From: Entomortierella parvispora E1425
Taxonomy: Eukaryota > Fungi > Mortierellomycota
NCBI GenBank assembly: GCA_020891255.1
Contig: BQFW01000007.1
Span: 2,604,001 to 2,668,000, forward strand
DNA: 64,000 bases
Direction: 5' to 3'
The first letter of the stretch is position 1. Each line of letters opens with the position of its first letter. The notes beneath the pieces were generated by a model. That model was not told the origin of the DNA. It did no database searches and saw only the letters and a list, made by a program, of their open reading frames with translations. Of this stretch, positions 1,368 to 63,055 are shown piece by piece. The translations under genes and the position numbers were made by a program.

Positions 1368-3248
1368 ATGGCTCCCATTGCATCCATCGAGTCTATCCTC
1401 GATATCGCTCCCATTCGCCATCGCATCAGCGTCCACCTTCGCCAACACGATCATGCCCAAGCCGTACGCGTCAACCGATCCTGGAACCGGGCTCTTCTTC
1501 CCCACCTTTGGTCGCTATTGAAAGGTTTCCATCTTCACTCGTTTCAGTCCCCAGAGATCCGAGCTGCCCTCTTGAGAAATGGATGCCACATCCGCGTCCT
1601 TCGTACCAACACACACGAGTTCTTGACCTACCTCGGACCTGCCTGCACCAATTTAGTCACATTTGACTTTTCAGGGTCCTTTCCACTTGAAGCACGCGAG
1701 GACCGGTCTGCCAGCGACTTGCCCTTATGGTCCCAGGTGGAAGGTCAGGCACAGGAGTACTCTCAAGGACATGGACATGGACATGGGCATGAAGAACAAG
1801 GAGAACAGGGAGGACAAGGACAGGATCCATCATCTATTTCAATTCCTTACCATGAGCGAGCCCTCGAGCTGATGGGCCGCTTCCTACTTCAGAACCAAAA
1901 CTTGACCACGCTCAGCTTTCGACGCTGTGTCGATTCAAGGCGGTACCTGGACCGACTTTTAACAGACTATCGGATCCTGGAACAACTACCAAGGCTCAAG
2001 GACCTGACCCTGACCTCCAAAAGTTTGCATTCCTCAGCTTTGTCGGTTTTATTGAGGCACGGTCAAAGGTTGGAGAGGCTCGCTCTCAAGATTCGACAAA
2101 TTGAATGGCAAATTCGTTACAGTAATCAAGAAATGGCCGCCGTCTTGAAAGAACCCTCAGTGGCGGGAAAGACTTGGAATCTCAGGGAACTGCAGTTTGG
2201 ACCCATCGAAGGCTTTGATGTCAGCATCTTGGTCGAGGCCGCAGGATCATCTTTGGTATCGCTGGGATTAGAGCGTCTATCCCTCTATGAGGCTCAAGGA
2301 TTGTCAAAGGTCGTTCGAGAACATTGTCCCAACTTGAAGCATCTTGTGATCAGGACAGACAATAAGATTGACAAGAACGGATTGTCCCTTCTTTTGGATG
2401 CCGCAGCAGGAGCAACAGCGCCCCCACAATCATCGCAGAAGGCAACAAAGGGAGGCAACATCAACACAACCCTTGTGACACCATCACATTCCAAACGGGA
2501 TCGAGTAGGTCTGACAGACTTCCAAGGGCACGCTCTGGTCCTACCTGATTTTTTAATTCCACGACTGTTTGCGAAGCATTATGGGTGTATCGAGTTTTTG
2601 GATCTATCTCGATCTCGGGGGATCAGGAGTGAGAATATTCAACGGATTCTGTGCCAGTGTCCAAATTTACGTGTCTTGGATATGGCCAGTGAACATTTGA
2701 CGTTGGAAACCAAGGATATCCTATGCGGGCCGCGATGGGCATGTGAACGGCTGGAGATCTTGCAGGTGGAGATTGCTTGTAGCCCTCCTCCATACGACGA
2801 CCTACCCCCTTTGCCACGTTTGATTGCGGCAGAAGATACATTAGAACTGGAGGGTTCAACTCACTCCACCACTGCGTTGGATCGCTCATGGAACTCGGTT
2901 GAGGTACAGAGACAAGTCTTGGTTCAAATCGGATCCTTTACAAGGATGCAAGAGCTGATGATTGGAGGTTCGCATGGTCGATCCCTGGATCTGACTCTGG
3001 GGGAAGGAGGTGGAGGTCTAGAGCTACTATCAGGACTGAAAAGGATGCGGAATATGAATGTCAAAAAGATGGGACACAAAGCCGGACAACAGGAGCTCGA
3101 GTGGATGATCAGGCAATGGCCTATGGTGCGCTTGCTCATGTTCCAGGGTTACAATCCAGATATGATTGATTTTGACAGACTCGCAGAGCTGAAAATTGCA
3201 GGACGAAAGGGAAAGACGGCCACTCAGGCACGAGCGACCCCTCAGTGA
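1368..3248 (+). CDS. F-box-like + degenerate LRR protein (family A, paralog 1), 626 aa
   Basis: Single open ORF. N-terminal F-box-like segment (SILDIAPIRHRISVHLRQHD..AVRVNRSW..LLPHLW), LxxLxL repeats, and C-terminal motif LxLGEGG..GLELLSGLKRMRNMNV..MGH..G..ELEWMIRQWP. Collinear with 4924..6744. Confidence 0.85.
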   Translation: MAPIASIESILDIAPIRHRISVHLRQHDHAQAVRVNRSWNRALLPHLWSLLKGFHLHSFQSPEIRAALLRNGCHIRVLRTNTHEFLTYLGPACTNLVTFDFSGSFPLEAREDRSASDLPLWSQVEGQAQEYSQGHGHGHGHEEQGEQGGQGQDPSSISIPYHERALELMGRFLLQNQNLTTLSFRRCVDSRRYLDRLLTDYRILEQLPRLKDLTLTSKSLHSSALSVLLRHGQRLERLALKIRQIEWQIRYSNQEMAAVLKEPSVAGKTWNLRELQFGPIEGFDVSILVEAAGSSLVSLGLERLSLYEAQGLSKVVREHCPNLKHLVIRTDNKIDKNGLSLLLDAAAGATAPPQSSQKATKGGNINTTLVTPSHSKRDRVGLTDFQGHALVLPDFLIPRLFAKHYGCIEFLDLSRSRGIRSENIQRILCQCPNLRVLDMASEHLTLETKDILCGPRWACERLEILQVEIACSPPPYDDLPPLPRLIAAEDTLELEGSTHSTTALDRSWNSVEVQRQVLVQIGSFTRMQELMIGGSHGRSLDLTLGEGGGGLELLSGLKRMRNMNVKKMGHKAGQQELEWMIRQWPMVRLLMFQGYNPDMIDFDRLAELKIAGRKGKTATQARATPQ

Positions 3249-5010
3249 CCAGGATCTCTCTCATAGTCATCCAGCCTAATCCTGGGACAATACATGTCCA
3301 CTATCTTGGCCAGGATGGGCCACTGGTTCACAGAAACGAACATCCCAAAAAAAAAAAAAAAAAAAAAAAAAGGCGCACAGACAGGTTGGACCCTTTTAAA
3401 ATCAAATTCAAAAGTCGAGTGGCTTGTATTCTGGTGGCGAGTGGCCAAAACGACCGCGTGCCGTTGTTCCTCCTCTTTCGCCTTGCCACGGACCCGGTCG
3501 GCAAGTATCGAGGTAAGTATAAGTGGCTCTCGTCGAGAGGCTGGTACTGTGCGCAATCATCATTGAACGGGTATGCGGCGGGGAAGGACCGGCCATTTAA
3601 GTGACGTTCCAAGTGCAGAACGAGAGCATTATCCCCTAAATGTCTCTCTGGCATGCGGAAAAGAGACCAATGGTCGCGTCGGGTCTTGGGAGTTGCAGGT
3701 GATGTTCCTCTCCTGATTCCGTGTGAACGCTGTTTACATTTTCCTGTTGTCATGACTCTGGACATGGAATGAGGGTCTCCAATTGAATTTCTCTTGGCTT
3801 TTATTCTTCAAAGGCCAGCGAAAGGAGGAGTTGAGGTCAATGAGACTAGTACCGCTTGAGGGAAAAGTTGATTTCAACGCGTTGCATCAATCAGCAACCC
3901 GTCATTGAGGTTTCCTCTCGAAGGTGATGGGGGGTATTCAAAACCTTTGGTCGGCGGCAGACGCCTATGCCACATTTCCCCTTCTCCCACTGGCTTGTGA
4001 CTACGCTGCGAGACGTTCGGGGATAGCAAGTCGGGTGGGGATATGTCTGGCTGTGTTGTGATTCAAGTATCTTCTGATTTTACGGAGTTCTGCCGGCTTT
4101 CGTTTGAAGTCTTTTCGGTCGTCGTCTCGGAGCATTTAGGGTCTGTTATCCTTGACGCGTCGTTGGATGAGAAGGAAGGTAGTTCCCACCGGCTATGAGG
4201 GCAAAGTCTTGCATTGAAAAGCCCGTGCAGCTGGTGCGTTTTCTTTTACTTGCCTTTTTTGCGAGTAGCGAACAGTGCCTTTGTCGATAGTGCGTTATTT
4301 GACGGAGATGCTTGGAGAGATCAAGGTGTTCGAGTCGTGTTTCTGCAGATGATGAAGCGGGAGCGTGGCTCTTACATGTCTGGGCGGTATGTTTTCTTGC
4401 GCTGCCAATCAACACACCCCATAGTCAGGCACTATCACTCGCGTGGGGTTCTCAAAATACAACCTGAATCTGAATCTATTGTTTGTCTCTGACAATTACA
4501 GGTCTTTCATTGACATTAAAAGTCATGACTGACAAAACCCATGTCAATTTATTGACATGCCAATATTATTGGGGTGCGATGGCCTGCCGCCTGCTCGTTG
4601 GCGCGCCCTGCACAGCTTGGCCCTTTTCTTTCGAGAAGAGGGACAGTTGACTGAGAGCAGGCCAAAAGATTCATAGCCTTTCTTATTTTTTTTTTTTTTT
4701 TTTTTTGATCTTGAACAGTGAATAAAAAAAGTTTCAAAATATACTTGTACCAAACTGACTTCCAGCCAACATTTTTGGGCAGACGCCTCATGAAGGCTCG
4801 GAAGATGGCCGCAGTGGAATTCTGGTCAAGTTTTTATCCGAGCTTCCAACAACCTCAGCATGCTCTTTGTCTTTTCTTTCCTTCTTTGGAATGCACCTTT
4901 GACGGTTGCACTCTAAAGTCGTTTTATTGACCTTCTAAAAGAAAGGGCTTGACCAGAGGCCAATGTTCCGTGATCCACTCTAATTCCTCGGATCCAATCT
5001 TGTAGCCCAT
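2930..5010. repeat. Left (source) copy of a ~2.1 kb inverted duplication: 3' ends of both F-box paralogs plus their 1.7 kb intergenic region
   Basis: Reverse complement matches ~44728-46798. Sample 3246-3346 shows 4 mismatches in ~100 bp. The ORF track gives near-identical translations for 4146..4415(-) and 45306..45575(+), and for 3328..3765(-) and 45956..46453(+). Confidence 0.97.
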
Positions 5011-6744
5011 CTTTTTGATGTTAAAGTTTCGCATCTTCTTCAATCCTACAAGCAGCTCCAGTCCACCTTCGCCCAAGGACAGTTGCAAGGAACGGCCTTG
5101 AGTCCCTCCAACCATCAACTCATTCAAGCGGGTGAAGGTCCCGATCTGGGCAAGGACATAGCGTTGAATCTCCATCTCTGTCCAAGGTCTGGAAGCAGCC
5201 ACCATATCCTGGATAGCACGGTTGTGATCTGCATCCAAAGGAGGAGGGGGAAGCTTCAAATCGTCATAAGGAGGAGGACTCGAAACAATCGTAATCCGGA
5301 AGACTTCGATTCTGTGGCAAACCCAGCGAGGACCCAGAACGATGTCCTTGGTTTCCAGCGTCAAATGATCACTCGTCAAATCCAAGACTCGAAGGTTCGG
5401 AGTATGGCAGAGGATGAGTTGGACGGTATCACTCCGAACACCCCGAGAACGCGACAGGTCCAGAAAATCCAAAGTTGCATAGTGCTTGCTGAGCATCCGA
5501 TGGACCAAAAAGTCGGGAATGTCAAGTGCGTGCCCCTGGAAGCGAGTCAGTCCGCCCGTCCGAGGTGTCACTGTGCTAGGGGTTGGATCCGCGGGCTCTT
5601 GGAGTTGAGCCTTCTTGCATGTGGGTGTAAGCGAGAGTGTAGGCACCGCTGCCGCATCCAGTAAGAGAGTGAGTCCATTCTTGTCAATCTTGTTATCCGT
5701 CATCACCATTAGCTTCTCCAGCCGTGGACAGAAATCGCGCACAATCTTTGAAAGTCCCTGAGCCTCAAACAGCGAGAGCCTCTCCAGACGAAGGGATTCT
5801 AGCGATGGTCCTGCGGTCTTGACAATCAAGCCCAAATCGATCCCGACCATTGTTCCAAAATAAAGCTCCTTGAGTTTCCAGGGTTGTTGCGCACTTGAGG
5901 CTTGGAGGATTAACCCCAGTTCGTGGTTTCCATGGCCGATTTGCCATTCAATCTGCCGGACTTTGAGAACTAACCTCTCCAGTTTATGACCGTGCTGTAA
6001 TACCTTGACCAACGCAGAAGAGTTCAAGGTCTTGGAGGTCAAGGTCAAATCCTTTAGGTGTGGAAGCCGTTCTAGGATTTGATAGTCGGTTAAAAGGCGA
6101 TCCAAATAGCGCCTCATGCTGACCCAACGCCGGAAACTGAGGATGGAGATGTTTTCATTTTGGTGGAGAAATCCTTGCATAATAGTCAAATGTTGGAGCA
6201 GTTGCTGTGGCCTAGGCAAGTGTTGTTGTTGTTGTTGTCCTGCCCTTGCTCCACTTTGGATTTCCATAGCAGTGGTCGTGGCACTGGAAACAGTGGAAGT
6301 TGCAGTCGAGGGATCTGTTGCCATGTCGTTGTTCCCTCCAGAATCAGGCAGCTCCGACCGACTTTCTTGCAGCTGACGTTGGAATTGGTCCGCTGTCAAG
6401 TCTTCCACGTAGCCGTCTTCGCGTCCTTCCAACGGAAACGATCCCGAAAAGTCAAAGGTAGTTAGATCCTGACAAGACGATCCAAGGTAGGTTAGGAACT
6501 CGTGCGAACTAGTTTTGAGGGTCCGAATCAAGGGTCCGTTCTTGATCAAGGCCGCGCGCGCTTCGGGGCTCTTGAAGTAGCGGATGTTGAATCCTTTGAG
6601 GAGGCTCCAGAGGTGGGGGGTCAGCACACGGTACCAGGTTTGACTGACAAGGACACATTGTGCAAGGTCATGTTGACGGAGGAGAGCAGTGATGCGATGA
6701 CCAATTTGGGGATTGTCGAGGATGGAATCAATGGAAGGAGCCAT
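4924..6744 (-). CDS. F-box-like + degenerate LRR protein (family A, paralog 2), 606 aa
   Basis: Open ORF collinear with 1368..3248 (e.g. RRYLDRLLTDY.ILE.LP.LKDLTLTSK; TDNKIDKNGL; SPPPYDDL). Convergent with paralog 1 and ends about 30 aa earlier. Confidence 0.85.
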   Translation of the reverse strand: MAPSIDSILDNPQIGHRITALLRQHDLAQCVLVSQTWYRVLTPHLWSLLKGFNIRYFKSPEARAALIKNGPLIRTLKTSSHEFLTYLGSSCQDLTTFDFSGSFPLEGREDGYVEDLTADQFQRQLQESRSELPDSGGNNDMATDPSTATSTVSSATTTAMEIQSGARAGQQQQQHLPRPQQLLQHLTIMQGFLHQNENISILSFRRWVSMRRYLDRLLTDYQILERLPHLKDLTLTSKTLNSSALVKVLQHGHKLERLVLKVRQIEWQIGHGNHELGLILQASSAQQPWKLKELYFGTMVGIDLGLIVKTAGPSLESLRLERLSLFEAQGLSKIVRDFCPRLEKLMVMTDNKIDKNGLTLLLDAAAVPTLSLTPTCKKAQLQEPADPTPSTVTPRTGGLTRFQGHALDIPDFLVHRMLSKHYATLDFLDLSRSRGVRSDTVQLILCHTPNLRVLDLTSDHLTLETKDIVLGPRWVCHRIEVFRITIVSSPPPYDDLKLPPPPLDADHNRAIQDMVAASRPWTEMEIQRYVLAQIGTFTRLNELMVGGTQGRSLQLSLGEGGLELLVGLKKMRNFNIKKMGYKIGSEELEWITEHWPLVKPFLLEGQ

Positions 6745-41265: not shown

Positions 41266-44200
41266 ATGCTACGGTCCGCCCAAGAAAAGGCAGAGCGAAG
41301 GGCGTCCAAGACCCAGTCGCTCTATGTCGCCACTCCCTCCACTCTCTCTGCCCTCCCTCCCCAGCAGCTCCAGTCCTTCCAGCCTTCGTTTCCAGGGCAG
41401 CTCCAAGGCAGCAACACAGTGAACAGTCCATTAAGCAACTCCACCACTAACAATAACAGCAGCACTCCAAAGTCTCCCCGCAAGTCACGGCCCTTCTCAA
41501 TGATGTTCCTACACCCCCAGGACGAGCTTGCTAGGCAGCAGCAACAGCAGGAGGGCCTGCAGCAACAACAGCAGCCGCTGGAGTATCAGCAGCCGCTGCA
41601 CCAACAACCCCTGAACGAGTCAGACGAGGATGCCGCTACAGGGGACGGACAGTCGCTCACCTCCACCGTGATAGACTACGGCGAGAGTGACCTCAAGGAC
41701 GCAGACTCGGACACTCGCATGCTCATTGCCCATCTCAGTGACCTCGACGTAAGTGTTTGGGAGGAATGAGAGTTGGAAAGCCTTTGTGCGTGTGCGTGTG
41801 CTTGCCCTTTTTGGCAGCAGCTGTAGGCTCACTGCTCTCGACCCTGTCTCTTAAACTCATAGTCGGGGCTACCAATCCTTCTGGAACGCGTCAAACAAAA
41901 TCTACATTCTTGCAAGGTAGGCATTCAAACATGACTGCAGAGAGCTGAGGGCCACAGATCTCTATAGGACATTGGCTCTAAAAGGAGACACACTTGTTCT
42001 GTTCCATAGGACTTGGTTTCTTTTTTGAAAAAAAGATCCGTCATGGAAGCAGAGCATGGAACAAGTATTCTCAAGCTAGCGAGTGGATTGCGGGATTCTT
42101 ACCGACAGCAGTCTGAAGGAACACATGCCCCTTTTAAGCAAGGATCTTATGGCGACTGCTGGAACCACATCCTGGAGATGCATGAGCGCATGGGCACCAA
42201 CCGACTAGAGTTATCGAGAGACCTACACGTCATTTCTGAGGAGCTGTCAACCATCTATAAAGAAACAGATCGTAGCCGCAAGCAGGTAAATGGTTAAAGA
42301 CGTGATCGACGGAGTCAGCCTAGATAGTCCGTAAACATCGTGAATCAGGAAAACTCATTCCACTACTGTTATCTAGTTTAAGGAAGCAGGCGCTAAACAA
42401 GAGCGACTCGTACAAGAACAGGAGCAAAACTTGGAGAAGGTAAACTGTCAGTCCTGATGGCCAGAAGAAGATGTGATCGATGAAGATAAGAGCTCCTGAT
42501 GCTAAAAAGTGGGATCTCTACATGATTAGGCCAAGCAAAAGTACGACAGCTTGACGGAAGAATGGGAAAAGGCCATATTGCATAAGGCTGCGGACCCAAC
42601 GATCCCGAAAAAAGGAACAACCAAAGGCATGAGTATGAACATTTTTAAACAGCCCAAGTCTGCTGGTCAGGTAAGCGCTGGACAGGGCACACTGAAAGTT
42701 TACAATAGAAATTATCAAGAGCACATTCTCACCCCCATGATATTTACTTTGGATATGGATCATGTAGCTACATCGACAGGAGGAAGAGGCAAGGCTGAAA
42801 GCCGCTTCTTCTCACGAGCAGTACAAGCTTCAGCTTGCACGTACAAACGATGCTCGTCAGTACTATTACTCGCATACCCTTCCTAGTATTTTGAAGGTAA
42901 TCATCAAAGAGCCTCAATCGCGATTTTGTTCATTGTTTGGATCCTTGTGTCTAACCTTAGAGCTGTCATCTTTTAACGTTTGTAGAACCTGAAAGATACG
43001 ATTGATGAATCCGATCTCTCTCTACAGTACTATTTGATGCGCTACGGATACATGTCAGAGGACTACATGATGAAAGACGCTACTATTATGAGTCCCTTCC
43101 AAGGACCAGGTATGCCTCTTAATTGAACGCTTGCTACGTGCTTTTCTTGTAATAACATTTATGGTCATTTTTCCTTGAGACGCTCCAGAGCTTGGTCTCC
43201 GTGATCGTGTAGAGTTGATCAACAAGGACACCGATCTCCAAGTGTTTATTCAAGCAAGTTCAGCCAAAGCGACCCCCATCGTGAAAGACCCAGCACCCTA
43301 CGAAGAGTTTGTTATGGTAATAAGGCAAAGATGTGTGAAACATGCATCGTAAGGAAGAGGCTCAGAAACTTATGTTCAATCCCCTCTGTCGACAGTCAAC
43401 ATTGGCCCAGTCAATTGTCAACCCTAGACCAATATTTGGTTGCGATTTGGCAGAGCAGTTGAATAGAGACGAAAGAGAGTTACCAGAGATTCTGGTCAAG
43501 TGCTCTATGGCAATAGAACAGTTTGGTAAGGAGACATGCTGTCATTTACTTTATGTATTCCATGGACTATATTAACACCCGCTCATTTTTTGCAGGCATC
43601 GACAGCAAAGGAATCTATCGTGTGTCTGGAATCACTTCTGCGACCAATCGACTCCGATCTTCTTTTGATCGAGGTAAAAGAAAATGACAAAAGTGGGGAA
43701 AGTGGACTCCCATTCATGAATTAACATGTTGAACTTGCTTCTGGGATATCCTTCCGCAGATTGTGCCGCTGTAGACCTGTCAACGGAAGAAAGCTGTGGA
43801 GATATCAACAGCGTAGCCAGTGTCCTCAAGGCCTGGTTCAGAGAACTACCTGAGCCACTGCTGACCCGCAAATTGTATCCAGAATTCGTAAGGATAGCAG
43901 GCATTCAGGACGAAACTGAAAAGTTAACTAGCCTCCATCTGTGCACCAACAGTTTGCCAGATCCCAACTACGCGACGTTGAAATTTTTGATGTGCCATCT
44001 CAACCGGTACGTTTATTTTCAATGCTCTCTTGACAGCACAATGCCGGGGCTGACAAAACACTTATCTTTTCCTTTTTCTTTTTTTCTTTTTTTTTTTGGT
44101 GCTTTTGAAACTGACTTGACTTAGTATCCAAGCGAACCAAAAGGTGAATGCCATGGGGCCTACCAACTTGGGCTTGATCTTTGGTGCCACTTTGGCAGGA

Positions 44201-44662
44201 TCGGATGGCGATCCCTCAGACACAGCTGGATTAGCGCGTATGAGTGTTCAGAGTAACATTGTGGAGACTCTTTTGATCAACTACAACCAGATCTTTGGTG
44301 ATGAAGGAGAGGAGGAAGAGGAAGAGGTTGGACCAGTCGATCACGATACGCAGCCCGGAGGCGACGCCATGGGATATCAAGGCCACGATTACGACTACGA
44401 TGAGCAGCAACTGCACAATGGATATGAAGATCAAGAACACGACGACCATTATGAGCAGTTTGAACACGGGCACGCGCCACCAGATGAATATCACGATAAT
44501 GGGTCGGAACCTGTCTCTGCTGTAGAACAGAGATTTGAGGGCATTCGCCTGCATGATGGTCCGCCAAGGGTTGATGAGGATGAGTTTGGTATTCCACAAG
44601 ACCACGCGCAGCATATTCACCAGCAGGAGCAGCAGGAGCAGGGCGGAGTCCCATACTCATAG
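41266..44662 (+). CDS. F-BAR + RhoGAP protein (Rgd1/Rga7-like)
   Basis: Multi-exon. FCH motif LLERVKQN..SCK-DLVSFLKKRSVMEAEH; RhoGAP FGCDL..LPEILVKC..GIYRVSG..DINSVASVLKAWFRELPEPLL..NYATLKFLMCHL..NAMGPTNLGLIFG. Stop at 44662. Confidence 0.93.
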
Positions 44663-44727
44663 ACGGGAGTTGGCCGTGGATGACAAGGTGATTGATAAAG
44701 AATGGATACGAACTAAACACTAATATA

Positions 44728-46798
44728 GTGGGTTGAAGATTGGATCCAAGGAAGTGGGGTGAATCATGGGACATTGGCATCTGGTCAAGCCCTTTCTTTT
44801 AGAAGGTCAATAAAACGTCTTCAGAGTGCAACGGTCAAAGGTGCATTCCCAAGGAAAGAAAAGACAAAGAGCATGTTGAGGTTGTTGGAAGTTCGACCAG
44901 AGTTCCTTCGCGGCCATCTTCCGAGCCTTCATGAGGCGTCTGCCCAAAAATGTTGGCTGGAAGTCAGTTTGGTACAAGTATGTTTTGAAACTTTTTTTAT
45001 TCACTGTTCAAGATCAAAAAAAAAAAAAAAAAAAATAAGAAAGGCTATGAATCTTTTGGCCTGCTCTCAGTCAACTGTCCCTCTTCTCGAAAGAAAAGGG
45101 CCAAGCTGTGCAGGGCGCGCCAACGAGCAGGCGGCAGGCCATCGCACCCCAATAATATTGGCATGTCAATAAATTGACATGGGTTTTGTCAGTCATGACT
45201 TTTAATGTCAATGAAAGACCTGTAATTGTCAGAGACAAACAATAGATTCAGATTCAGGTTGTATTGGGAGAACCCCACGCGAGTGATAGTGCCTGACTAT
45301 GGGGTGTGTTGATTGGCAGCGCAAGAAAACATACCGCCCAGACATGTAAGAGCCACGCTCCCGCTTCATCATCTGCAGAAACACGACTCGAACACCTTGA
45401 TCTCTCCAAGCATCTCCGTCAAATAACGCACTATCGACAAAGGCACTGTTTTCTACTCGCTAAAAAAGCAAGTAAAAGAAAACGCACCAGCTGCACGGGC
45501 TTTTCAATGCAAGACTTTGCCCTCATAGCCGGTGGGAACTACCTTCCTTCTCATCCAACGACGCGTCAAGGATAACAGACCCTAAATGCTCCGAGACGAC
45601 GACCGAAAAGACTTCAAACGAAAGCCGGCAGAACTCCGTAAAATCAGAAGATACTTGAATCACAACACAGCCAGACATATCCCCACCCGACTTGCTATCC
45701 CCGAACGTCTCGCAGCGTAGTCACAAGCCAGTGGGAGAAGGGGAAATGTGGCATAGGCGTCTGCCGCCGACCAAAGGTTTTGAGTACCCCCCATCACCTT
45801 CGAGAGGAAACCTCAATGACGGGTTGCTGATTGATGCAACGCGTTGAAATCAACTTTTCCCTCAAGCGGTACTAGTCTCATTGACCTCAACTCCTCCTTT
45901 CGCTGGCCTTTGAAGAATAAAAGCCAAGAGAAATTCAATTGGAGACCCTCATTCCATGTCCAGAGTCATGACAACAGGAAAATGTAAACAGCGTTCACAC
46001 GGAATCAGGAGAGGAACATCACCTGCAACTCCCAAGACCCGACGCGACCATTGGTCTCTTTTCCGCATGCCAGAGAGACATTTAGGGGATAATGCTCTCG
46101 TTCTGCACTTGGAACGTCACTTAAATGGCCGGTCCTTCCCCGCCGCATACCCCTTCAATGATGATTGCGCACAGTACCAGCCTCTCGACGAGAGCCACTT
46201 ATACTTACCTCGATACTTGGCGGTCGGGTCCGTGGCAAGGCGAAAGAGGAGGAACAACGGCACTCGCGAAGGCGCGGTCGTTTTGGCCACTCGCCACCAG
46301 AGAACAAGCCACTCAATTTTTGAATTTGATTTTAAAAGGGTCCAACCTGTCTGTGCGCTTTTTTTTTTTTTTTTTTTTTTTTGGGATGTTCGTTTCTGTG
46401 AACCGGTGGCCCATCCTGGCCAAGATAGTGGACATTTATTGACCCAGGATTAGGCTGGATGGCTATGAGAGAGATCCTGGTCACTGAGGGGTCGCTCGTG
46501 CCTGAGTGGCCGTCTTTCCCTTTCGTCCTGCAATTTTCAGCTCTGCGAGTCTGTCAAAATCAATCATATCTGGATTGTAACCCTGGAACATGAGCAAGCG
46601 CACCATGGGCTATTGCCTGATCATCCACTCGAGATCCTGTTGTCCGGCTTTGTGTCCCATCTTTTTGACATTCATATTCCGCATCCTCTTCAGTCCTGAT
46701 AGTAGCTCTAGACCTCCACCTCCTTCCCCCAGAGTCAGATCCAGGGATCGACCATGCGAACCTCCAATCATCAGCCCTTGCATACTTGTGAGGAACCG
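44728..46798. repeat. Right (derived) inverted copy of ~2930-5010; weak homology may extend to ~44690
   Basis: Direct base comparison. Differences include a 10-bp indel (gccttcgcga near 46265), an ~11-bp indel near 44900 and different poly-A lengths. Confidence 0.97.
46485..46798 (-). pseudogene. Promoterless 3' fragment of F-box paralog 1 with a nonsense change
   Basis: Reads ..ELMIGGSHGRSLDLTLG..DLEWMIRQ*PMV. TGG (W) of paralog 1 is TAG here (~46609-46611). Confidence 0.9.
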
Positions 46799-46829
46799 CT
46801 GGACATCAATCGCGGTCCGAGAGCGATAT

Positions 46830-46886
46830 CTTCACTGGCCTGGTTGAGCTGATGGTTGGAGGGACTCGAAGGCCGTTCCTCGCAAC
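46830..46886 (+). pseudogene. Out-of-order 57-bp fragment of F-box paralog 2 (matches the reverse complement of ~5082-5137)
   Basis: cttcactggcctggttgagctgatggttggagggactcgaaggccgttcctcgcaac versus paralog 2 cttcacccgcttgaatgagttgatggttggagggactc-aaggccgttccttgcaac: about 8 differences in 57 columns, and closer to paralog 2 than to paralog 1. Confidence 0.85.
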
Positions 46887-47054
46887 AGCATCGGAAGGGG
46901 AAAGAAAACGCCACCAAATCAAGAGATCACGTGCACACACGAAGCACGACTCGCACGAATGCACATCTGCATCATCACCCATTCGGCCACCCTCTTCTGC
47001 TCCCTCTTCACTCTCCTTCACACTCACACACACACCTACACACATCCAACCACA

Positions 47055-47505
47055 ATGAGCCTGGCAACATCTGAGCTGGTACTTTACTCCAAACAGGATT
47101 CTCGTCAGCACTAGTTAAACGCGTGACATGGAGGAGGGACTAAATTCTCATCTTGGCTTCCTTCCATCATTATTATAGCAAGCAGCCTGGGCCACTGCTG
47201 GCCCCTTCCAGGCCCCCTTTGCTGCCTCATCCTTCCCCATCCTTGCTCTGACAACCATGACAGCTGGCCTGTTCTTTGCCGCCAAGTTTGGACTGTACAA
47301 ACTACTTACCTCTTACTATGTTTTTTTTGGGTACTGGGAAGCGTCTTGATATGTGAACTAATACTCCTTGTTTCTTTGCCCCTGTTCTTTCCTTAGTGCT
47401 GAGAAGCCCGTCTTTGTGAACGATCTCGCTGCCTCGGTAGGCAGCTCGATCTTCCTTGGCTTTGGTATCGTGTTCGTGTTCCTTGCCGTCGGACTTTACG
47501 TGTAG
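47055..47505 (+). CDS. OST5: Oligosaccharyltransferase subunit OST5/TMEM258, 82 aa (not in the ORF track)
   Basis: Exons 47055-47078, 47179-47294 and 47397-47505 (249 nt) give MSLATSELQAAWATAGPFQAPFAASSFPILALTTMTAGLFFAAKFGLAEKPVFVNDLAASVGSSIFLGFGIVFVFLAVGLYV*. The two-TM layout and the S.F.GFG..F..L.VG.YV end match TMEM258. Confidence 0.88.
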
Positions 47506-56710: not shown

Positions 56711-57332
56711 CCGCGCGCGTGCGCCATTGTTTTTTTTTTTTTTTTTTTTCCCAAGTTTAGGGCAGAAAGTGTCGAGTGGATCTTTTGAGTTGCCGAGAAT
56801 CAAGGTAGAGAGCGTACAGTTGGTCTTGAGAGCCTCTGACAGCGCGCAAGCATCATTTTTGTAATAAATATGTTGATATTGCGCTTTTCCAGCCCCACCC
56901 GTTCAATTTCATTTCGCAAATCGCGAGATGGTGAATTGAAAAAAACGACATCGCGGATATCTATCTACCTTTATCGCATTTGCTATACTGCAGCAAATAC
57001 GACTTTAGGTAGAAATCTTCCTGAAATCGCAGTTGCTGCGACACCAAATCGACCCGTCCGTGCGCGTTCCCAAAAAATCATTCCGCTCGCTGCAGTCATG
57101 AGATGTGGGTCGCGGCCAGCATGGACAAGAAGAAGACTCTCTTTGCCTTTACACTTCCATGTCTCTGTGCCTCCATCACCTTGCACTTGTAATGTACATC
57201 CGCCCCAGCTCTAATTCCCCCTCTCTCTCATTCCTTCCTTCCTTCCTTCTTTCCTTCACTCATAGTCACCTGGCCTGTTTGCTGATGCGCTGTTTGCGTT
57301 GCTGCCTCTGTGCTGGAGAGGACAGTCCGATT

Positions 57333-58068
57333 CAGCAGACCAGCAAGTTCTTCAGCAAACAACAGCAAGCATTTCAGCAGACCAGCATGTTTTTCAGCAA
57401 ACAACGGCAAGCATTTCAGCAGACCAGCATGTTTTTCAGCAAACAACAGCAAGCATTTCAGCAGACCAGCAAGTTCTTCAGCGAACAACAGCAAGCATTT
57501 CAGCAGACCAGCATGTTTTTCAGCAAACAACGGCAAGCATTTCAGCAGACCAGCATGTTTTTCAGCAAACAACAGCAAGCATTTCAGCAGACCAGCAAGT
57601 TCTTCAGCAAACAACAGCAAGCATTTCAGCAGACCAGCATGTTTTTCAGCAAACAACGGCAAGCATTTCAGCAGACCAGCATGTTTTTCAGCAAACAACA
57701 GCAAGCATTTCAGCAGACCAGCAAGTTCTTCAGCGAACAACAGCAAGCATTTCAGCAGACCAGCATGTTTTTCAGCAAACAACGGCAAGCATTTCAGCAG
57801 ACCAGCATGTTTTTCAGCAAACAACAGCAAGCATTTCAGCAGACCAGCAAGTTCTTCAGCGAACAACAGCAAGCATTTCAGCAGACCAGCATGTTTTTCA
57901 GCAAACAACGGCAAGCATTTCAGCAGACCAGCATGTTTTTCAGCAAACAACAGCAAGCATTTCAGCAGACCAGCAAGTTCTTCAGCAAACAACAGTAAAC
58001 ATTTCAGCAAACCAGCAAGTTCTTCAGCAAACAATAGCAAATATTTCAGCAGACCAGCAGGTTCTTAA
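57333..58068. repeat. 42-bp minisatellite (~17 units) arranged as a 126-bp three-monomer higher-order repeat
   Basis: Monomer cagcagaccagcaagttcttcagcaaacaacagcaagcattt. Variant order A B C A' B C A B C A' B C A' B C A, then 1-2 degenerate units. Confidence 0.98.
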
Positions 58069-58318: not shown

Positions 58319-59715
58319 TCACCAATAAATTCTCAGGGCAGAGTTGGTCTCGGCGACTTCTGTTAGAGCTTGACCTCCCTCTTCTCCAACTGAGTTACCC
58401 CGTAAATCCATGTGGAACAGGGTTCGTCTGGTCATGAGCGCTGCCGAGAGTGCCAGAGCTCCGCCACATCCAACCGAGTTGTCACAGAGGCCCAGAGTGG
58501 ACAGAGTCGAATTGATCAAGAGTGCCTCTGCCATTGCCTCTGCTCCTTTCTTTTCAATCATGTTCTGCCTTAAATCCAGAGCCAATAGGGTCCTGTTGGT
58601 CCTGAGGGCGTTTGCCAAAGCAAAAGCTCCAATATCGTCGATTGAATTAAAGGACAATTCTAAAACGGTCAGGGTCCTGTTGCACTCGAGTGCTTCTGAA
58701 AGCGCTTGACCTCCGACCGTTCCAATCGAGCAGCCGGCCAGTGATAGAAGCGCCAACCCCGAGTTCATCTTGAGTGCTTCTGAGAGCGCCTGGACAGCCT
58801 CGTCCTTGATCGGGTTTATCTGCAAGATTAACTCAGACAGTGTCGGGTTGATCTTGAGTGCTTTGGCTAGTGCCTCCATACCTTCGGCATGTATAAGATT
58901 TTCACTCAGATCCAAGGTGGACAAAGTCTTGTTGACTTTGAGCATCTCTGACAGCGCCTGAGCCCCTTCATTTGCAATCACATTACTGCGCAACTTTAAG
59001 GTAGACACCCCAGAGTTGGTTTTGAGAGCCTCTGACAGTTCTAGAGTCCCGTCAGTCTTGAGCATGTTGTGGCTCAAATCCAGGTTCTCCAAGGTATTGT
59101 TGGTTTTGAGGGCCTGCGACAGTGCCTGAGCTCCAGTATTCTCTATCCGATTGTGCCTCAGACACAACGTTGTCAGTGTCTTGCTGCATTTGAGCACCTC
59201 TGAAAGAGCTTGAGCTCCAACCCTGCCAATCCAATTGCCCCTCAGATCCAGTGTTGTCAGTGTCCTGTTGATCTTGAGCGCGTCCGATAAAGATTGAAAT
59301 CCATTCCCGCCAATCCGACTGTGCGCCAGGCTCAACGTTGTCAGGGTTGTGTTGGTCTTGAGGGTCTCTGACAGCACCAGAGTGTTTTTATCAAGAATTG
59401 GGTGTTCGTTCAAGTCCAAAGAGGATAGAGACAAATTGGTCAGGAAGGTTGAAAGCAATACATCCGCTTTAGGAGAAAGAAGAGCTTTCTCGTTAGACAT
59501 TTGAAATGCAAGGTGTCGTATCAGATGCTTGTTTTTGGTGAGAGTCTCTTGACTGGGGCCCTTTTCAGAATAAAAGACAAGGATGTAGAGCGCTGGCGTG
59601 AAGGATGCGCTCCAGTCTAGACTCACAAGTGCACAGGATGCAAGATCTTTGTGACGAAGACTCCTCGCAATTCGTGAACGGATCTCATGAGTTCGAGAGG
59701 ATGTGTGTGCGACAT
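58319..59715 (-). pseudogene. F-box + RNI-like LRR gene (family B, copy 1); 12-13 intact 28-aa repeats but a 1-bp frameshift in the F-box
   Basis: 28-aa repeats NxTLxxLDLxxNxIGxxGAxALSEALKx. ATG 59715 (MSHTHPLE) is out of frame because of a 1-nt deletion near 59688 relative to copy 2 (HPLDLHEIRSRIA). A sequencing error cannot be excluded. Confidence 0.75.
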
Positions 59716-60329
59716 TAGTTTTAATGTGGATGGTACAAAAGAGGAATCAATGACGGTGGAGAGAATGAAGAGGATAGGATATCAGAGGGGGACAACCCAA
59801 TGCAGGGTTGCGATACGAAAGCAGACAAAAAGAGAGAAACAGTGTGCTCTTCGAGGGGGAAGGAGGAAAGAGAGCAGAAGACAAGCACTGACCTGGTGGA
59901 AGGTTGCCGCAGTCAGTTGGTGGCGAAGCCCTCAGATTTAATGCAGAGAGCAATTGTTGAAATCCATGGCATGCATGTCTCGGCTCTCATGGGAATTCTC
60001 TCGCAAGGCAAAGAGCCAGCCTGTGGTCGCTCCAGCGCTTTTTTACCATGTAGTTTTTTTTTTCTTTTGTTCAACCTATCAAAGAATTTTCAGGGCAGAA
60101 TTTTAAAAAAGAGTGAGTGAAGAAAAAAAAGGGGGACGACAGCTTTATTGTTTTTTTGCTGGCGTTGATCCAGCAGATTGCCTACAGTTGTCAAATGTGC
60201 GATCTTCGCCGCAGCAGTTCACGGAACGAGCTCTCGCCACATGGTACGATTGGGCTGTGCAGCCAGACGCTTCAGCTTTTTCTTTTATTCGTGAGCTCAA
60301 GATTTACAGTACTCAGCTCTTCAACCGAA

Positions 60330-61456
60330 CTACACAAGATTGGCCATGTGTACTTCTGCCAGGGCTTGATGTCCTTCTTGTCCAATCAAGTTGACCAACA
60401 AGTTCAAGGAAGACAGAGTCCTATTGGTCTTGAGTCCCACCGATAGTGCCTGAGCTCCTTCGTTTCCAACTGAGTTGCTGCACAAGTCCAAAGAGATCAG
60501 CGTCGAGTTGATCACTAGTGCTTCTGATATTGCTCGTGCTCCTTCATTTCCAATCAAGTTGTGTCTCAAGTCTAGGGTAGTCAAGGTGCTGTTGGTCTTG
60601 AGCGCCTCTGAAAGTGCCAATACTCCACGATCGCCGATTGAATTGAAGGACAATTCCAATGAAGTCAGCGTATTGTTGAACTTGAGCGCCGCAGACAACG
60701 CCTGTGCTCTGTGGTGTCCAACACCGTTGTGGTTCAATCTCAAGACTCTCAAAGCTACGTTGGTCTTGAGGACTTCTGAAAGCGCCTGGGCGCCTGCTTA
60801 TCCCACAGAGTTGTGCTGCAGGTTCAAAGTTGACAGGGCTGTGTTTTTCTTGAGTGCCGCTGCCAGGACCAGAATTCCTTCAGTTTCAAACAGGTTGGAT
60901 TCCAAGTTCAATGTCTCCAGAGTATTATTGACCATGAGGGCTTTTGACAATCCGCTCCGATCAAATCAATCGAGTTGTTCCCCAGATCCAAATCCGTCAG
61001 AGTCCCATTCGTCTTTAGTACATCTGATAGAGCCTGAGCTCCGTCGTCTTGAACCCATGTGTACATCAGATTCAGCGCCGTCAAGGCTGTGTTGGTCTTG
61101 AGGGTCTGCGACAGCAACAAGGTGCCGTTATCTTCCAGCGAGTTTTCGCTCAAATCCAAGGTGGAGAGCGACAATTCAACCAAGATGCGGGAAAGAAGTG
61201 CATATCCCTCGGTTGTTGCAAGGGCGTCATAGCTAGAGCCCCGCAATTTGAGGTGTCGTATCAAATGTCTCTTTGACCCAAGAGTCTCTGGACTAAGACC
61301 CTGTTCGGAACATATTACAAAACTATAGAGTGTCGGTGTGAAGGACCTGTTCCAATCCAGACACACCCTCGCACAGGATGCAAGATCTTTGTGACCAAGG
61401 CTCTTGGCGATTCGTGAACGGATCTCGTGCAGATCGAGGGGATGTGTTTGTCTCAT
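60330..61456 (-). pseudogene. F-box + RNI-like LRR gene (family B, copy 2), disrupted
   Basis: Intact start MRQTHPLDLHEIRSRIAKSLGHKDLASCARVCLDW. Frameshift near 60945 and in-frame TAA at 60798-60800 (NSVG*AGAQALSE). Confidence 0.85.
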
Positions 61457-61817
61457 TTTTTTTTTTTTCGTTGTGAAATGTGGAGGGGAGAAAACAAGCG
61501 AAATGAGATGCTAGAGAATACAGGTGACGCAATGATCCGAGCTAGACAGGAACAATGGACGTAGATGCACTGCAGTGAGTTGAAGAAAATATCAAAAGTG
61601 AGTGAAGAGGGAAAAGAAGACAACTGGGTTTCCATCCACCAATTTCTCAGACCCTCTGATTTCAAAGAAGCCTCGCCACCGGTGGTATTCTAGAAGACTC
61701 TGCGACTTGATTGCTCTTTGGAACCCCTGCCTGCAAGCTACACCTGGGCTGTGCCATCCAAGGCTCACAGCGGTTTTTTTTCCTTTGCCAGTTGCAACAA
61801 TCTGTTATTCACACATT

Positions 61818-63055
61818 CTACATTTCTCCTTCTTCGACAGAATTGCCCCACATGTTCAAGCGAGACAAAGTCCTGTTGCTCTTGAGTGCCAGTGACAGTG
61901 CCTGAGCTCCCGCATTTCCAATCGAGTTGTCACAGAGGTTCAAGGTGGCCAGACCCGAGTTGATCAGGAGTGCCTCTGCCAGCGCCGTTGCTTCTTCATT
62001 TCCAATCGTGTTGCGTCTTAGGTCCAATATCAACAAGGCCGTGTTGAAACAGAGCGTCTTTGCCAGTGCCTTGGCACAAATGCTTCGGATCTCACTCGAG
62101 TTCAGTCCCAAAGAGGTCAGGGTGCTGTCTGACTTGAGCGCCTGTGATAGCGCCAGACCACCAATAAATCCGATCTGGTTATAGCACAACATCAATGTGG
62201 CCATCCCTGTGTTAATTCAGAGTGCCTCTGACAACGCCACTGCGCCAAAGTCCCCGATCGAGTTCTCCCGCAAGTTCAAGGAGGACCGAGTCCTGTTCTT
62301 CTTTAGTGCTTCCGCCAAGGCATGTACTCCCTCCTCTCCAATCGAGATGTCCTTCAGGTTCAAGCTGACCAAGGTCTGGTTAACATGGAGCGCCATGGAC
62401 AGCATCTCGGCACCTTCGTCTCCAATCTTGTTGTCACATAGACATAAGGATGATAGACCAGCATTGACCTTGAACGCCTCTGACAACACAAGCGCGCCCG
62501 TTGCTCGAATCTTGTTCCGTCCCAGGTTCAAATTAGACAGACCCTTGTTGATCCTGAATGCTTCGGCCAGGACATGAGCGCCGTCAGTTCCAAACCGGTT
62601 GTACTCCAAGTTCAAAGTCGCTACACTGGTGTTGATCTTGAGGGCCACCGACAATGCCTCGACCCTTTACAAATCAATAGAGTTGCGGCACAGGTCCAAA
62701 GCTGTCAGAGTCTTGTTGATCTTGAGTGCGGATGACAGAATCTGAGCTCGAACCCCGCCAGTCAAGTTGTCCATCAAGCTGAAAGCCGCCAGGAACTTGT
62801 TGATCCTGAGTGTGTCCAATACATCCAGAATGTTACTAGTTTCGATAAAGTTCTCACTCATGTCCTAGGTGGATAGAGGCAGGTCGATCAAGACGCGAGA
62901 AAGGCATACACCTTGACTGTACTCTAGAACTGCTGATTTCTTGATCTTGAGATGTCGTATCAGATGCTGGTTTCGTTCAGGAATCCGTGGACGGAGGCCT
63001 TGTCCAGAATATGCAATAAAATTGTAGAGTGCCGCTGTAAAAGATGCGTTCCCGT
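61818..63055 (-). pseudogene. F-box + RNI-like LRR gene (family B, copy 3), 5'-truncated and disrupted
   Basis: Begins at NASFTAALY..NQHLIRHL, with no F-box start upstream. Stops TAG 62865-62867 and TAA 62667-62669, frameshift near 62217. The LRR units are otherwise recognisable. Confidence 0.85.

What the first reader, a model, noticed from the sequence alone, without database searches (positions are those of the whole stretch)
44690..46890. Circularly permuted inverted copy of the F-box junction: possible footprint of a reintegrated circular DNA
In source coordinates the copy reads ~5010 down to ~2930, then ~30 bp of unassigned sequence, then ~5137 down to ~5082. The piece that should come first comes last. 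This is the order expected if 2930-5140 was joined into a circle, opened near 5010-5080 and inserted elsewhere. The internal junction falls at homologous codons of the two inverted paralogs (IGSFTRMQELMIGG / IGTFTRLNELMVGG), pointing to homology-guided template switching. No transposase, terminal repeat or target-site duplication is visible. An alternative is multi-step MMBIR/FoSTeS copying with no free circle.
Basis: partly seen in the sequence, partly recalled or inferred. Interest (0 to 1): 0.75.

Follow-up and report, generated by a model that had tools for sequence, protein, structure and literature searches.

The report
Ring-permuted copy of a gene junction
In a Mortierella-family soil fungus, a 2.2-kb stretch spanning the tail-to-tail junction of two inverted sister genes was copied 40 kb away with its first 60 bases placed last, the order expected if the DNA went once round a ring; this route of duplication is known but rarely documented, and it cannot be proven from this sequence alone.

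Summary
Window 44736-46798 is an inverted 96.4% copy of 5001->2930. It is followed by 46830-46886, which matches 5137->5082 in the same orientation, so the order is circularly permuted. No other place in the 38.9-Mb genome matches that last piece better.

I refine three points:
- The "unassigned 30 bp" is most likely the ORF1 tail continuing (2909->2879) after a 21-nt deletion.
- The donor interval, about 2879-5139, is represented once, minus 32-80 nt at the opening point.
- The internal junction is head-to-head. Annealing of a growing strand to the paralog cannot make it. It lies near the base of the stem that the two inverted gene tails can form.

One turn round a closed template, most simply a free circle, is the best reading (about 0.5). 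Replicative template switching without a free circle remains a strong rival (about 0.3).

The cargo is a conserved non-coding cassette ending in a hepatitis-delta-like ribozyme motif, which earlier notes of this scan found on other DNA of this genome. Further copies of it exist (contig 12 and others), but none has transposon hallmarks.

The empty-site test failed for lack of data. This is a new member of a known kind, of moderate interest.

The parts
1368..3248 (+). ORF1, intact 626-aa F-box/LRR-like gene (donor, left arm)
   Evidence: Open frame. Weak Pfam LRR_4 and LRR_At5g56370 hits below the cut-off. 56% protein identity to ORF2.
4924..6744 (-). ORF2, intact 606-aa inverted paralog of ORF1 (donor, right arm)
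   Evidence: Open frame. Weak F-box-like hit, 18 bits against a cut-off of 24.3. At least 67 family hits in the genome.
2879..5139 (.). Donor interval represented once in the copy (about 2.26 kb): ORF1 tail, non-coding cassette and ORF2 tail
   Evidence: Mosaic alignment, best-match scan and alignment.
2925..3107 (+). Inner block of inverted homology, ORF1 side. It pairs with 4972-5150 at about 65-76% identity, which drops to 31-44% just outside
   Evidence: Codon-aligned identity profile. DNA co-fold gives an in-register stem from 2952/5121 to 3119/4960, a gain of -39 kcal/mol against -10 +/- 3 for shuffles.
3425..4420 (+). Conserved non-coding module, the core of the cassette. At least 8 copies in the genome
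   Evidence: No consistent reading frame.
4569..4675 (+). Hepatitis-delta-like ribozyme motif at the 3' end of the cassette
   Evidence: Rfam RF00094, 26.6 bits (gathering score 50), full-length model match. At least 40 dispersed copies of this ~100-nt stretch.
44690..44735 (+). Possible diverged left extension of the copy (about 5049->5002)
   Evidence: Anchored extension score 9. P=0.013 against shuffles and 0/300 against random genomic pieces. MAFFT gives only 24/46 identity. Weak support.
44736..46798 (+). Main block of the copy, equal to donor 5001->2930 inverted
   Evidence: 96.4% over 2082 columns.
45046..45152 (-). Copy of the ribozyme motif, identical to the donor
   Evidence: 45045-45244 is identical to 4676->4477.
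46799..46829 (+).
   Evidence: 22/31 identity, the best non-self match in the whole window on both strands. Chosen by the mosaic alignment at jump penalties 6-10.
46830..46886 (+). Permuted block R, equal to ORF2 5137->5082 in sense orientation, head-to-head with the ORF1 fragment
   Evidence: ORF2-specific bases. The junction folds as a hairpin of the two ELM(I/V)GG-coding arms.
43726..44662 (+).
   Evidence: Pfam RhoGAP 80.8 bits. Orthologous metagenome contigs L025 and L026.
47056..47505 (+). OST5 gene (spliced), right neighbour of the insertion
   Evidence: Pfam Ost5: exon at 47395-47502 scores 34 bits (cut-off 27.4) and exon at 47179-47295 scores 18.8 bits. Exons were searched separately and not joined.

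Best explanation
A segment of about 2.26 kb (about 2879-5139) was copied once around a closed path and inserted about 40 kb away. It holds the last ~120 codons of ORF1, the 1.7-kb non-coding cassette with its delta-like ribozyme motif, and the last ~72 codons of ORF2. It now lies inverted in the short spacer between the stop codon of a RhoGAP gene and the start of OST5.

The simplest form of that closed path is a free double-stranded ring. Its closure joined the two outer ends (about 2879 to about 5139). These ends lie close to the base of the imperfect stem that the two inverted gene tails can form in single-stranded DNA. The ring was then opened between about 5050 and 5081, lost a few dozen bases, and was joined into a chromosomal break without homology. 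The donor stayed intact, either because it was copied or because it was repaired from the sister chromatid.

Shown: the permuted order, single coverage, the head-to-head junction, the position of the junction at the edge of the inverted-homology block, the absence of transposon hallmarks, and the intact donor.

Inferred: the ring itself, the stem-loop as the reason for where it closed, and end joining at the target.
For: 1. There are two colinear blocks in the same orientation and in permuted order, adjacent in the recipient. This is the published signature of ring-mediated duplication (PMC7188851; PMC7450558).
2. Entry (5001, perhaps 5049) and exit (5082) points lie 32-80 nt apart, so the interval is covered once. 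A random switch-and-return would place them this close only a few percent of the time.
3. The closure joins near-mirror positions of the inverted paralogs: ORF1 codons 505-523 against ORF2 codons 532-536. These sit at the outer edge of the inverted-homology block. They are within 18 nt (ORF2 side) and 22-73 nt (ORF1 side) of the base of a predicted in-register stem that is about 10 sd more stable than shuffles. This fits the inverted-repeat stem-loop excision model drawn in a 2025 review (PMC11879418).
4. No target-site duplication, terminal repeats or poly(A) tail were found. No other locus holds the junction or a better source for block R.
5. The copy differs from the donor by 3.6% including indels, with changes on both lineages when polarised by the contig-12 copy. 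It is therefore a real old paralog, not an assembly duplicate.
Against: - No ring, empty site or population data could be examined.
- 32-80 nt are missing at the opening point, so the two blocks do not abut exactly as the strict published criterion asks.
- The stem is only about 70% matched and would have a loop of about 1.9 kb, so its formation in vivo is uncertain.
- The two ends of the insertion (44690-44779 and 46776-46886) are 15-30% diverged against 0.6-5% for the interior, mostly by changes on the copy's side. This blurs the breakpoints. It could mean error-prone synthesis at the ends, which would favour a replicative rival, or later gene conversion of the interior.
- A polymerase running once round a stem-bridged template would leave the same footprint without any free ring.
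Confidence: 0.5

Rival explanations
1. Replicative repair with template switches and no free ring (MMBIR/FoSTeS). A broken end at the RhoGAP-OST5 spacer invaded the donor near 5001-5049 and copied down to about 2879. It then jumped back 2.2 kb on the same template to 5139, copied about 60 nt and returned to the target. The jump may have crossed the base of a stem formed by the inverted gene tails in the template strand, so that the polymerase went once round a stem-bridged loop.
For: - The donor is intact, so the process was copy-type.
- The two ends of the insertion and the junction zone carry 5-8 times more changes than the interior, mostly on the copy's side. Error-prone synthesis near breakpoints is a reported trait of replicative rearrangements (my own knowledge, not checked here).
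- The stem geometry explains the jump point equally well.
- Chicote et al. (PMC7450558) themselves invoke a replicative interaction with the acceptor.
Against: - Plain template switching does not explain why the exit (5082) lies within 32-80 nt of the entry. That needs the added stem-bridged-loop assumption.
- The junction orientation rules out homology-driven annealing to the paralog.
- Divergence of 15-30% at the ends is far above what polymerase error alone would give.
- Microhomology cannot be read because the pre-insertion target is unknown and the ends are diverged.
Confidence: 0.3
2. Several separate events. One version is a simple inverted insertion of 5139->2879 followed by a local tandem duplication and two deletions. 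The other is two independent insertions of donor pieces side by side.
For: - The same donor region was copied at least once more: the contig-12 copy, equal to 4857->3299 plus 2831->2675 and not permuted. The region is therefore duplication-prone.
- The hyper-diverged ends could be older than the interior.
Against: It needs three or more events whose end points happen to fall at the same donor position and the same recipient position. Takahashi and Innan argue that such coincidences are very unlikely. No remnant of a second unit is present.
Confidence: 0.1
3. The cassette is a mobile element, possibly moving through RNA in a retrozyme-like way using the delta-like ribozyme, and it carried its flanks along.
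For: - The inner 1.5 kb has a 93% copy on contig 12.
- A ~0.9-kb module has at least five more copies at 73-77%.
- The ribozyme motif has dozens of copies.
- Earlier notes s1-180475 and s1-180478 raised this for other loci.
Against: - The edges of the copy lie 250-450 nt outside the cassette, inside unique gene tails.
- Neither the closure point (2879|5139) nor the opening point (about 5050-5081) coincides with the ribozyme cleavage site at about 4568/4569.
- There is no poly(A) tail, target-site duplication, terminal repeat or long terminal repeat, and no reverse transcriptase or transposase.
- In other loci the module and the ribozyme are arranged differently.
Confidence: 0.04
4. Assembly artefact (chimeric or fold-back reads).
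For: The junction is head-to-head, a shape that strand-switch artefacts can give. No reads could be inspected.
Against: Block R is ORF2-like, not a reverse complement of the adjacent ORF1 fragment. The copy differs from the donor at 74 columns, with indels and lineage-specific changes. The assembly has 20 contigs for 38.9 Mb.
Confidence: 0.03

Closest known systems
Ring-mediated (eccDNA-mediated) duplication or translocation: cattle colour-sidedness KIT segment (Durkin 2012), Z. bailii segment in wine yeast (Galeote 2011), human cases (Takahashi and Innan 2020, PMC7188851; Chicote 2020, PMC7450558)
   Same: The donor order a..j appears as e..j+a..d at a distant site. There are two parallel diagonals in a dot plot, no transposon hallmarks and non-homologous junctions.
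   Different: - It is much smaller (2.2 kb against 17-500 kb).
- The second block is only about 60 nt.
- 32-80 nt are missing at the opening.
- The closure lies at near-mirror positions of two inverted paralogs.
- It is seen in an early-diverging fungus.
- There is no direct ring or population evidence.
Inverted-repeat slippage / stem-loop excision model of ring formation without chromosomal deletion (review PMC11879418, Fig. 5B)
   Same: Inverted repeats bracket the excised interval, the ring closes at the base of the annealed repeats, and the donor is left intact.
   Different: The model is hypothetical, and the review says the cutting point is unknown. Here the repeats are ~180-nt gene tails only about 70% matched, with a 1.9-kb loop, and the joined ends sit 18-73 nt outside the predicted stem.
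MMBIR/FoSTeS complex rearrangements
   Same: Copy-type insertion with more than one template segment from one region, and an intact donor.
   Different: Single coverage with near-coincident entry and exit points is not a general feature. Microhomologies could not be read.
ODIRA (origin-dependent inverted-repeat amplification)
   Same: Inverted repeats and a closed DNA loop leaving the chromosome.
   Different: ODIRA gives inverted dimers whose junction folds back on the same sequence. Here the unit is a monomer, and the piece after the junction comes from the other paralog.
Retrozymes and ribozyme-bounded circular RNAs
   Same: The cargo carries a self-cleaving-ribozyme motif, and a circular intermediate is inferred.
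   Different: There is a single ribozyme motif, the junctions are not at its cleavage site, and there are no long terminal repeats, primer-binding site or poly(A).

Membership tests
Ring-mediated (circularly permuted) duplication | Two donor blocks in the same orientation and in swapped order at the recipient | tested here: met
   5001->2930(2879) followed by 5139->5082.
Ring-mediated (circularly permuted) duplication | The outer ends of the two blocks abut in donor coordinates, giving a single opening point with no gap or overlap | tested here: inconclusive
   The gap is 80 nt by conservative bounds and 32 nt if the weak left extension (P about 0.01) is accepted. The ends are strongly diverged.
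Ring-mediated (circularly permuted) duplication | The two blocks are adjacent at the recipient (the ring-closure junction) | tested here: met
   There is no unexplained spacer once 46799-46829 is read as ORF1 2909->2879. Otherwise the spacer is 18-31 nt.
Ring-mediated (circularly permuted) duplication | Physical ring, or an empty site in relatives | not testable with these tools
The metagenome scan gave L025, which ends 90 nt before the RhoGAP stop, and L026, which is too distant.
Conventional transposable element | Terminal repeats, target-site duplication, transposase or reverse transcriptase, and several copies with the same ends | tested here: not met
   No such features. Other copies have different ends.
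Homology-driven template switch between inverted repeats (replication U-turn) | After the switch the copy continues in the opposite direction along the other repeat | tested here: not met
   Block R runs 5139->5082 (ORF2 sense). The U-turn prediction is 5140 upward.
ODIRA | Inverted dimer with a fold-back junction of the same sequence | tested here: not met
   Monomer. R matches ORF2 57/69 against ORF1 41/69.
Retrozyme-like RNA circle | Ring junction at ribozyme cleavage sites, with ribozymes in both terminal repeats | tested here: not met
   One motif at 4569-4675. The junctions are at 2879|5139 and about 5050-5081.
HDV-like ribozyme (Rfam RF00094) | Score at or above the gathering threshold, with the double-pseudoknot core | tested here: inconclusive
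   26.6 bits against 50, a full-length match with E=0.046 in 281 nt. The whole-genome family scan returned no hit above the cut-off.
F-box/LRR proteins (ORF1, ORF2) | Pfam F-box and LRR domains above the cut-off | tested here: inconclusive
   All hits are below the cut-off: F-box-like 18 against 24.3, and LRR_4 25.5 against 27.

The most novel reading that the evidence does not exclude
The inverted tails of the two sister genes act as a natural excision device. They fold into a stem that lets the enclosed ribozyme-bearing non-coding cassette leave as a DNA ring and land elsewhere without any transposase. This route would then have helped spread the conserved cassette family (65 or more ribozyme copies, by earlier notes) through this fungus. 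The cassette core is 7-10 times more conserved than its flanks in all three close copies, which would mean the transplanted copies stay functional.
Probability: 0.08. Interest if true: 0.65.

Novelty: new member of a known kind. Interest (0 to 1): 0.4.

Why it matters
Germline duplications that passed through a DNA ring are accepted in only a handful of cases (cattle, wine yeast, a few human segments). How such rings close is mostly unknown.

This locus is small enough to read every junction. It places the closure at the edge of an inverted-homology block, as a so-far hypothetical inverted-repeat stem-loop model predicts. It also shows a conserved non-coding, ribozyme-bearing cassette being moved to a new neighbourhood, between a RhoGAP gene and OST5.

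The locus gives a concrete, testable site: outward PCR or Circle-seq for a 2879|5139 junction. It comes from a fungal lineage where I found no paper on chromosomal rings in the one search I ran.

Tried and rejected
It also gave a 76% relative with 370 nt of unrelated sequence downstream. Neither is informative.
2. Better source for block R elsewhere in the genome: none.
3. Extension of R beyond 5082: none. The leftward extensions of R and of the ORF1 block were not significant under small-gap scoring.
4. Target-site duplication or terminal repeats: none.
5. Protein coding in the cassette: there are tblastx hits in several frames with stops, and no consistent frame.
6. tRNA: none.
7. RIP-like mutation bias: no. 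There are 32 transitions out of 50 substitutions, in all four directions.
8. Faster evolution of ORF2 in the donor as the cause of the diverged ends: rejected. With ORF1 as outgroup, the changes fall on the copy's side, 19 against 3 in one end and 6 against 1 in the other.
9. Back-splice (circular RNA) origin: I saw no GT/AG at the joined ends in the alignment, judged by eye only.
10. Cassettes generally lying between convergent F-box paralogs: no.
11. Spliced gene models (RhoGAP gene, OST5) were searched exon by exon by reference. Exons were not joined.
Full report
**Setting.** The window is contig 7:2604001-2668000 of a 38.9-Mb, 20-contig fungal assembly. Earlier notes of this scan name the fungus Entomortierella parvispora (Mortierellaceae; the name is in the taxonomy). 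I did not verify the identity.

At the left of the window two intact, intron-less genes lie tail to tail. ORF1 is 1368-3248 (+, 626 aa) and ORF2 is 4924-6744 (-, 606 aa). They are 56% identical in protein, with weak F-box-like and LRR hits below the Pfam cut-offs. They belong to a family with at least 67 hits in the genome, but their next relatives are at most 45% identical.

Between them lies 1.7 kb with no consistent reading frame.

**Observation.**
- Window 44736-46798 is the reverse complement of 5001-2930, at 96.4% over 2082 columns (repeat finder pairs I1-I5 and I7).
- It is followed by 46830-46886, which matches 5137->5082 in the same orientation: 86% over 57 nt, 93% over 42 nt, and 81% if taken from 46817/5150 (I9).
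- The local score of 42 compares with a maximum of 14 in 200 shuffles.
- This piece (R) carries ORF2-specific bases: 57/69 identical to ORF2 against 41/69 to ORF1.
- A whole-genome search with 46780-47000 found only itself and ORF2.

The piece that comes first in the donor therefore comes last in the copy.

**Refined breakpoints.** I ran a mosaic (jumping) alignment against both strands of 2400-5700. At jump penalties 6-10 it gives 46700-46827 = 3029->2881, including a 21-nt deletion, and then 46828-46886 = 5139->5082.
This is exactly the colinear continuation of the ORF1 tail.
- I therefore read the closure as about 2879|5139 with no filler. With stricter small-gap scoring this extension is not significant, so 2930|5137-5150 with an 18-31 nt spacer remains possible.
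- At the left end, an anchored extension suggests the copy may reach 44690 (about 5049). P was 0.013 against shuffles and 0/300 against random genomic pieces, but MAFFT gives only 24/46 identity.
- The right end does not extend past 5082.
- The donor interval, about 2879-5139, is thus represented once, minus 32-80 nt at the opening point.
- There is no target-site duplication and no terminal repeat.

**Recipient site.** The copy fills the spacer between the stop codon (44660-44662) of a RhoGAP-domain gene (Pfam 80.8 bits) and OST5 (Pfam Ost5, 34 bits for the exon at 47395-47502). Exons were searched separately by reference and not joined. Without the insertion the spacer would be about 250 bp. 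The copy holds only gene fragments; flags one stop in the ORF1-derived piece. The direction is therefore 2.9-5.1 kb -> 44.7-46.9 kb.

**Geometry of the internal junction.** On the copy's + strand the ORF1 fragment is antisense and R is ORF2 sense. The two ELM(I/V)GG-coding stretches face away from each other and can pair.

This matters for the mechanism. A growing strand ending in ORF1-antisense could anneal to ORF2, but it would then continue upward from 5140. Instead the copy runs 5139->5082.

The joined ends are near-mirror positions:
- With conservative bounds, ORF1 codons 521-523 correspond to ORF2 codons 534-536.
- With the 2879 reading, the offset is about 54 nt.
- They sit at the outer edge of an inverted-homology block (ORF1 2925-3107 against ORF2 5150-4972, 65-76% identical), beyond which identity falls to 31-44%.
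- With DNA parameters, the two tails co-fold into an in-register stem from 2952/5121 to 3119/4960. The gain is -39 kcal/mol against -10 +/- 3 for shuffles.

The closure thus lies close to the base of the stem-loop that this quasi-palindrome can form. The copied interval is that stem plus its loop.

**Interpretation.** Two features point to one turn round a closed template path: entry and exit points only 32-80 nt apart, and closure at the stem base. The published diagnostic for ring-mediated duplication is exactly this swapped order (Takahashi and Innan 2020, PMC7188851; Chicote et al. 2020, PMC7450558; with the cattle and wine-yeast precedents cited there). A 2025 review draws an inverted-repeat slippage model in which the stem-loop is excised and ligated into a ring while the chromosome stays intact, and notes that the cutting point is unknown (PMC11879418).

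My estimates are:
- A free ring that was opened and end-joined into a break: about 0.5.
- A replicative event in which a polymerase ran once round a stem-bridged template, or switched twice, without a free ring: about 0.3. It leaves the same footprint.
- Multi-step scenarios need coincident end points: about 0.1.
- A mobile-element or RNA route: about 0.04. The edges of the copy lie inside unique gene tails, and no junction coincides with the ribozyme cleavage site.
- An assembly artefact: about 0.03. It is unlikely given the 74 differing columns, with lineage-specific indels on both sides.

**Cargo and age.** The spacer between the genes contains, on the donor + strand:
- an A25 run (3347-3371);
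- a ~1-kb conserved non-coding module (3425-4420);
- a hepatitis-delta-like ribozyme motif (4569-4675; RF00094, 26.6 bits, below the gathering score of 50);
- a T21 run (4686-4706).

A third close copy lies on contig 12 (L003 1502-2976 = 4857->3374 at 93%). It continues as 3335->3299 and then, after a 468-nt deletion, as 2831->2675 at 74%. It is not permuted and serves as an outgroup. Differences between donor and copy fall on both lineages.

Divergence is strongly tiered:

| Segment | Copy against donor | Contig 12 against either |
|---|---|---|
| Core, 45045-46150 | 0.6% | 1.5-2.1% |
| Non-coding flanks | 4-5% | 20-24% |
| ORF1 tail | 2% | not reliably aligned |
| ORF2 tail, 44736-44813 (all differences in 44736-44779) | 10% | not reliably aligned |
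| Block R, 46817-46886 | 19% | not aligned |

The similar 7-10-fold reduction in the core in both comparisons suggests constraint on the cassette core, although gene conversion is not excluded. The excess changes at the ends are on the copy's side when polarised by ORF1, 19 against 3 and 6 against 1. Possible causes are error-prone processing at insertion, later conversion of the interior only (which would make the insertion as old as the contig-12 copy), or adaptation of the RhoGAP 3' end and the OST5 promoter. I cannot decide between them.

**Further copies.** The module has at least five more copies at 73-77% on contigs 1, 5 and 14, and the ~100-nt ribozyme stretch has dozens. In those loci the ribozyme sits about 520 nt downstream of the module in the opposite orientation. 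The cassette is therefore not a fixed mobile unit, and it is not generally placed between convergent F-box genes. Earlier notes of this scan (s1-180475, s1-180478) had already found the delta-like ribozyme family beside F-box genes on other DNA of this genome. My results agree with their view that these are local or segmental duplicates, not proven jumping elements.

**Limits.**
- The single metagenome scan gave no contig that crosses the site.
- No reads, population data or ring data exist here.
- The breakpoints lie in the most diverged parts of the copy, so microhomologies cannot be read.

**Verdict.** This is a new, small and unusually readable member of the known class of ring-type permuted duplications, with a geometric link to an inverted-repeat stem. 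Interest is moderate.

Noticed in passing
window 3425-4420 (+); also G000 C1:2604433-2605316, C1:2609681-2610563, C14:1576268-1577155, C5:314485-315393, C5:343239-344148: A ~0.9-1.0 kb non-coding module conserved at 73-77% across at least 8 loci, with no consistent reading frame. In the distant copies a delta-like ribozyme motif lies about 520 nt downstream in the opposite orientation. In this window it lies 140 nt downstream in the same orientation.
   Followed up: partly
window 45045-46150 against 4676-3571, and L003 (contig 12): The cassette core is 7-10 times less diverged than its flanks in all three close copies (0.6% against 4-5%, and 1.5-2% against 20-24%). This means either purifying selection on a non-coding RNA or cis element, or repeated gene conversion.
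   Followed up: partly
window 44690-44779 and 46776-46886: Both ends of the insertion are 15-30% diverged from the donor, mostly by changes on the copy's side, while the interior is at most 5% diverged. The cause is unexplained: error-prone end processing, interior-only gene conversion, or adaptation of the neighbouring genes' signals.
   Followed up: partly
window 3347-3371 and 4686-4706: An A25 run and a T21 run flank the cassette in inverted arrangement. They could pair in single-stranded DNA or act as nucleosome-free or terminator tracts.
   Followed up: no
G000 C1:2603800-2611200 (L105/L109): A large quasi-palindrome with the order ribozyme(+), module(-), 4.4-kb spacer, module(+), ribozyme(-). 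This is a second inverted arrangement of the same cassette parts.
   Followed up: no
G000 C12:2401862-2403530 (L003 1502-3167): A third, older, non-permuted partial copy of the same donor region: the cassette plus a 150-nt ORF1-like fragment at 74%, with a 468-nt internal deletion. The same region has been copied at least twice.
   Followed up: partly
window 57331-58066: A minisatellite with a 42-bp period and higher-order structure.
   Followed up: no
window 58429-62018: Several diverged direct repeats (74-79%, 120-240 nt) spaced 1.5-3.4 kb apart. Probably a tandem gene family.
   Followed up: no
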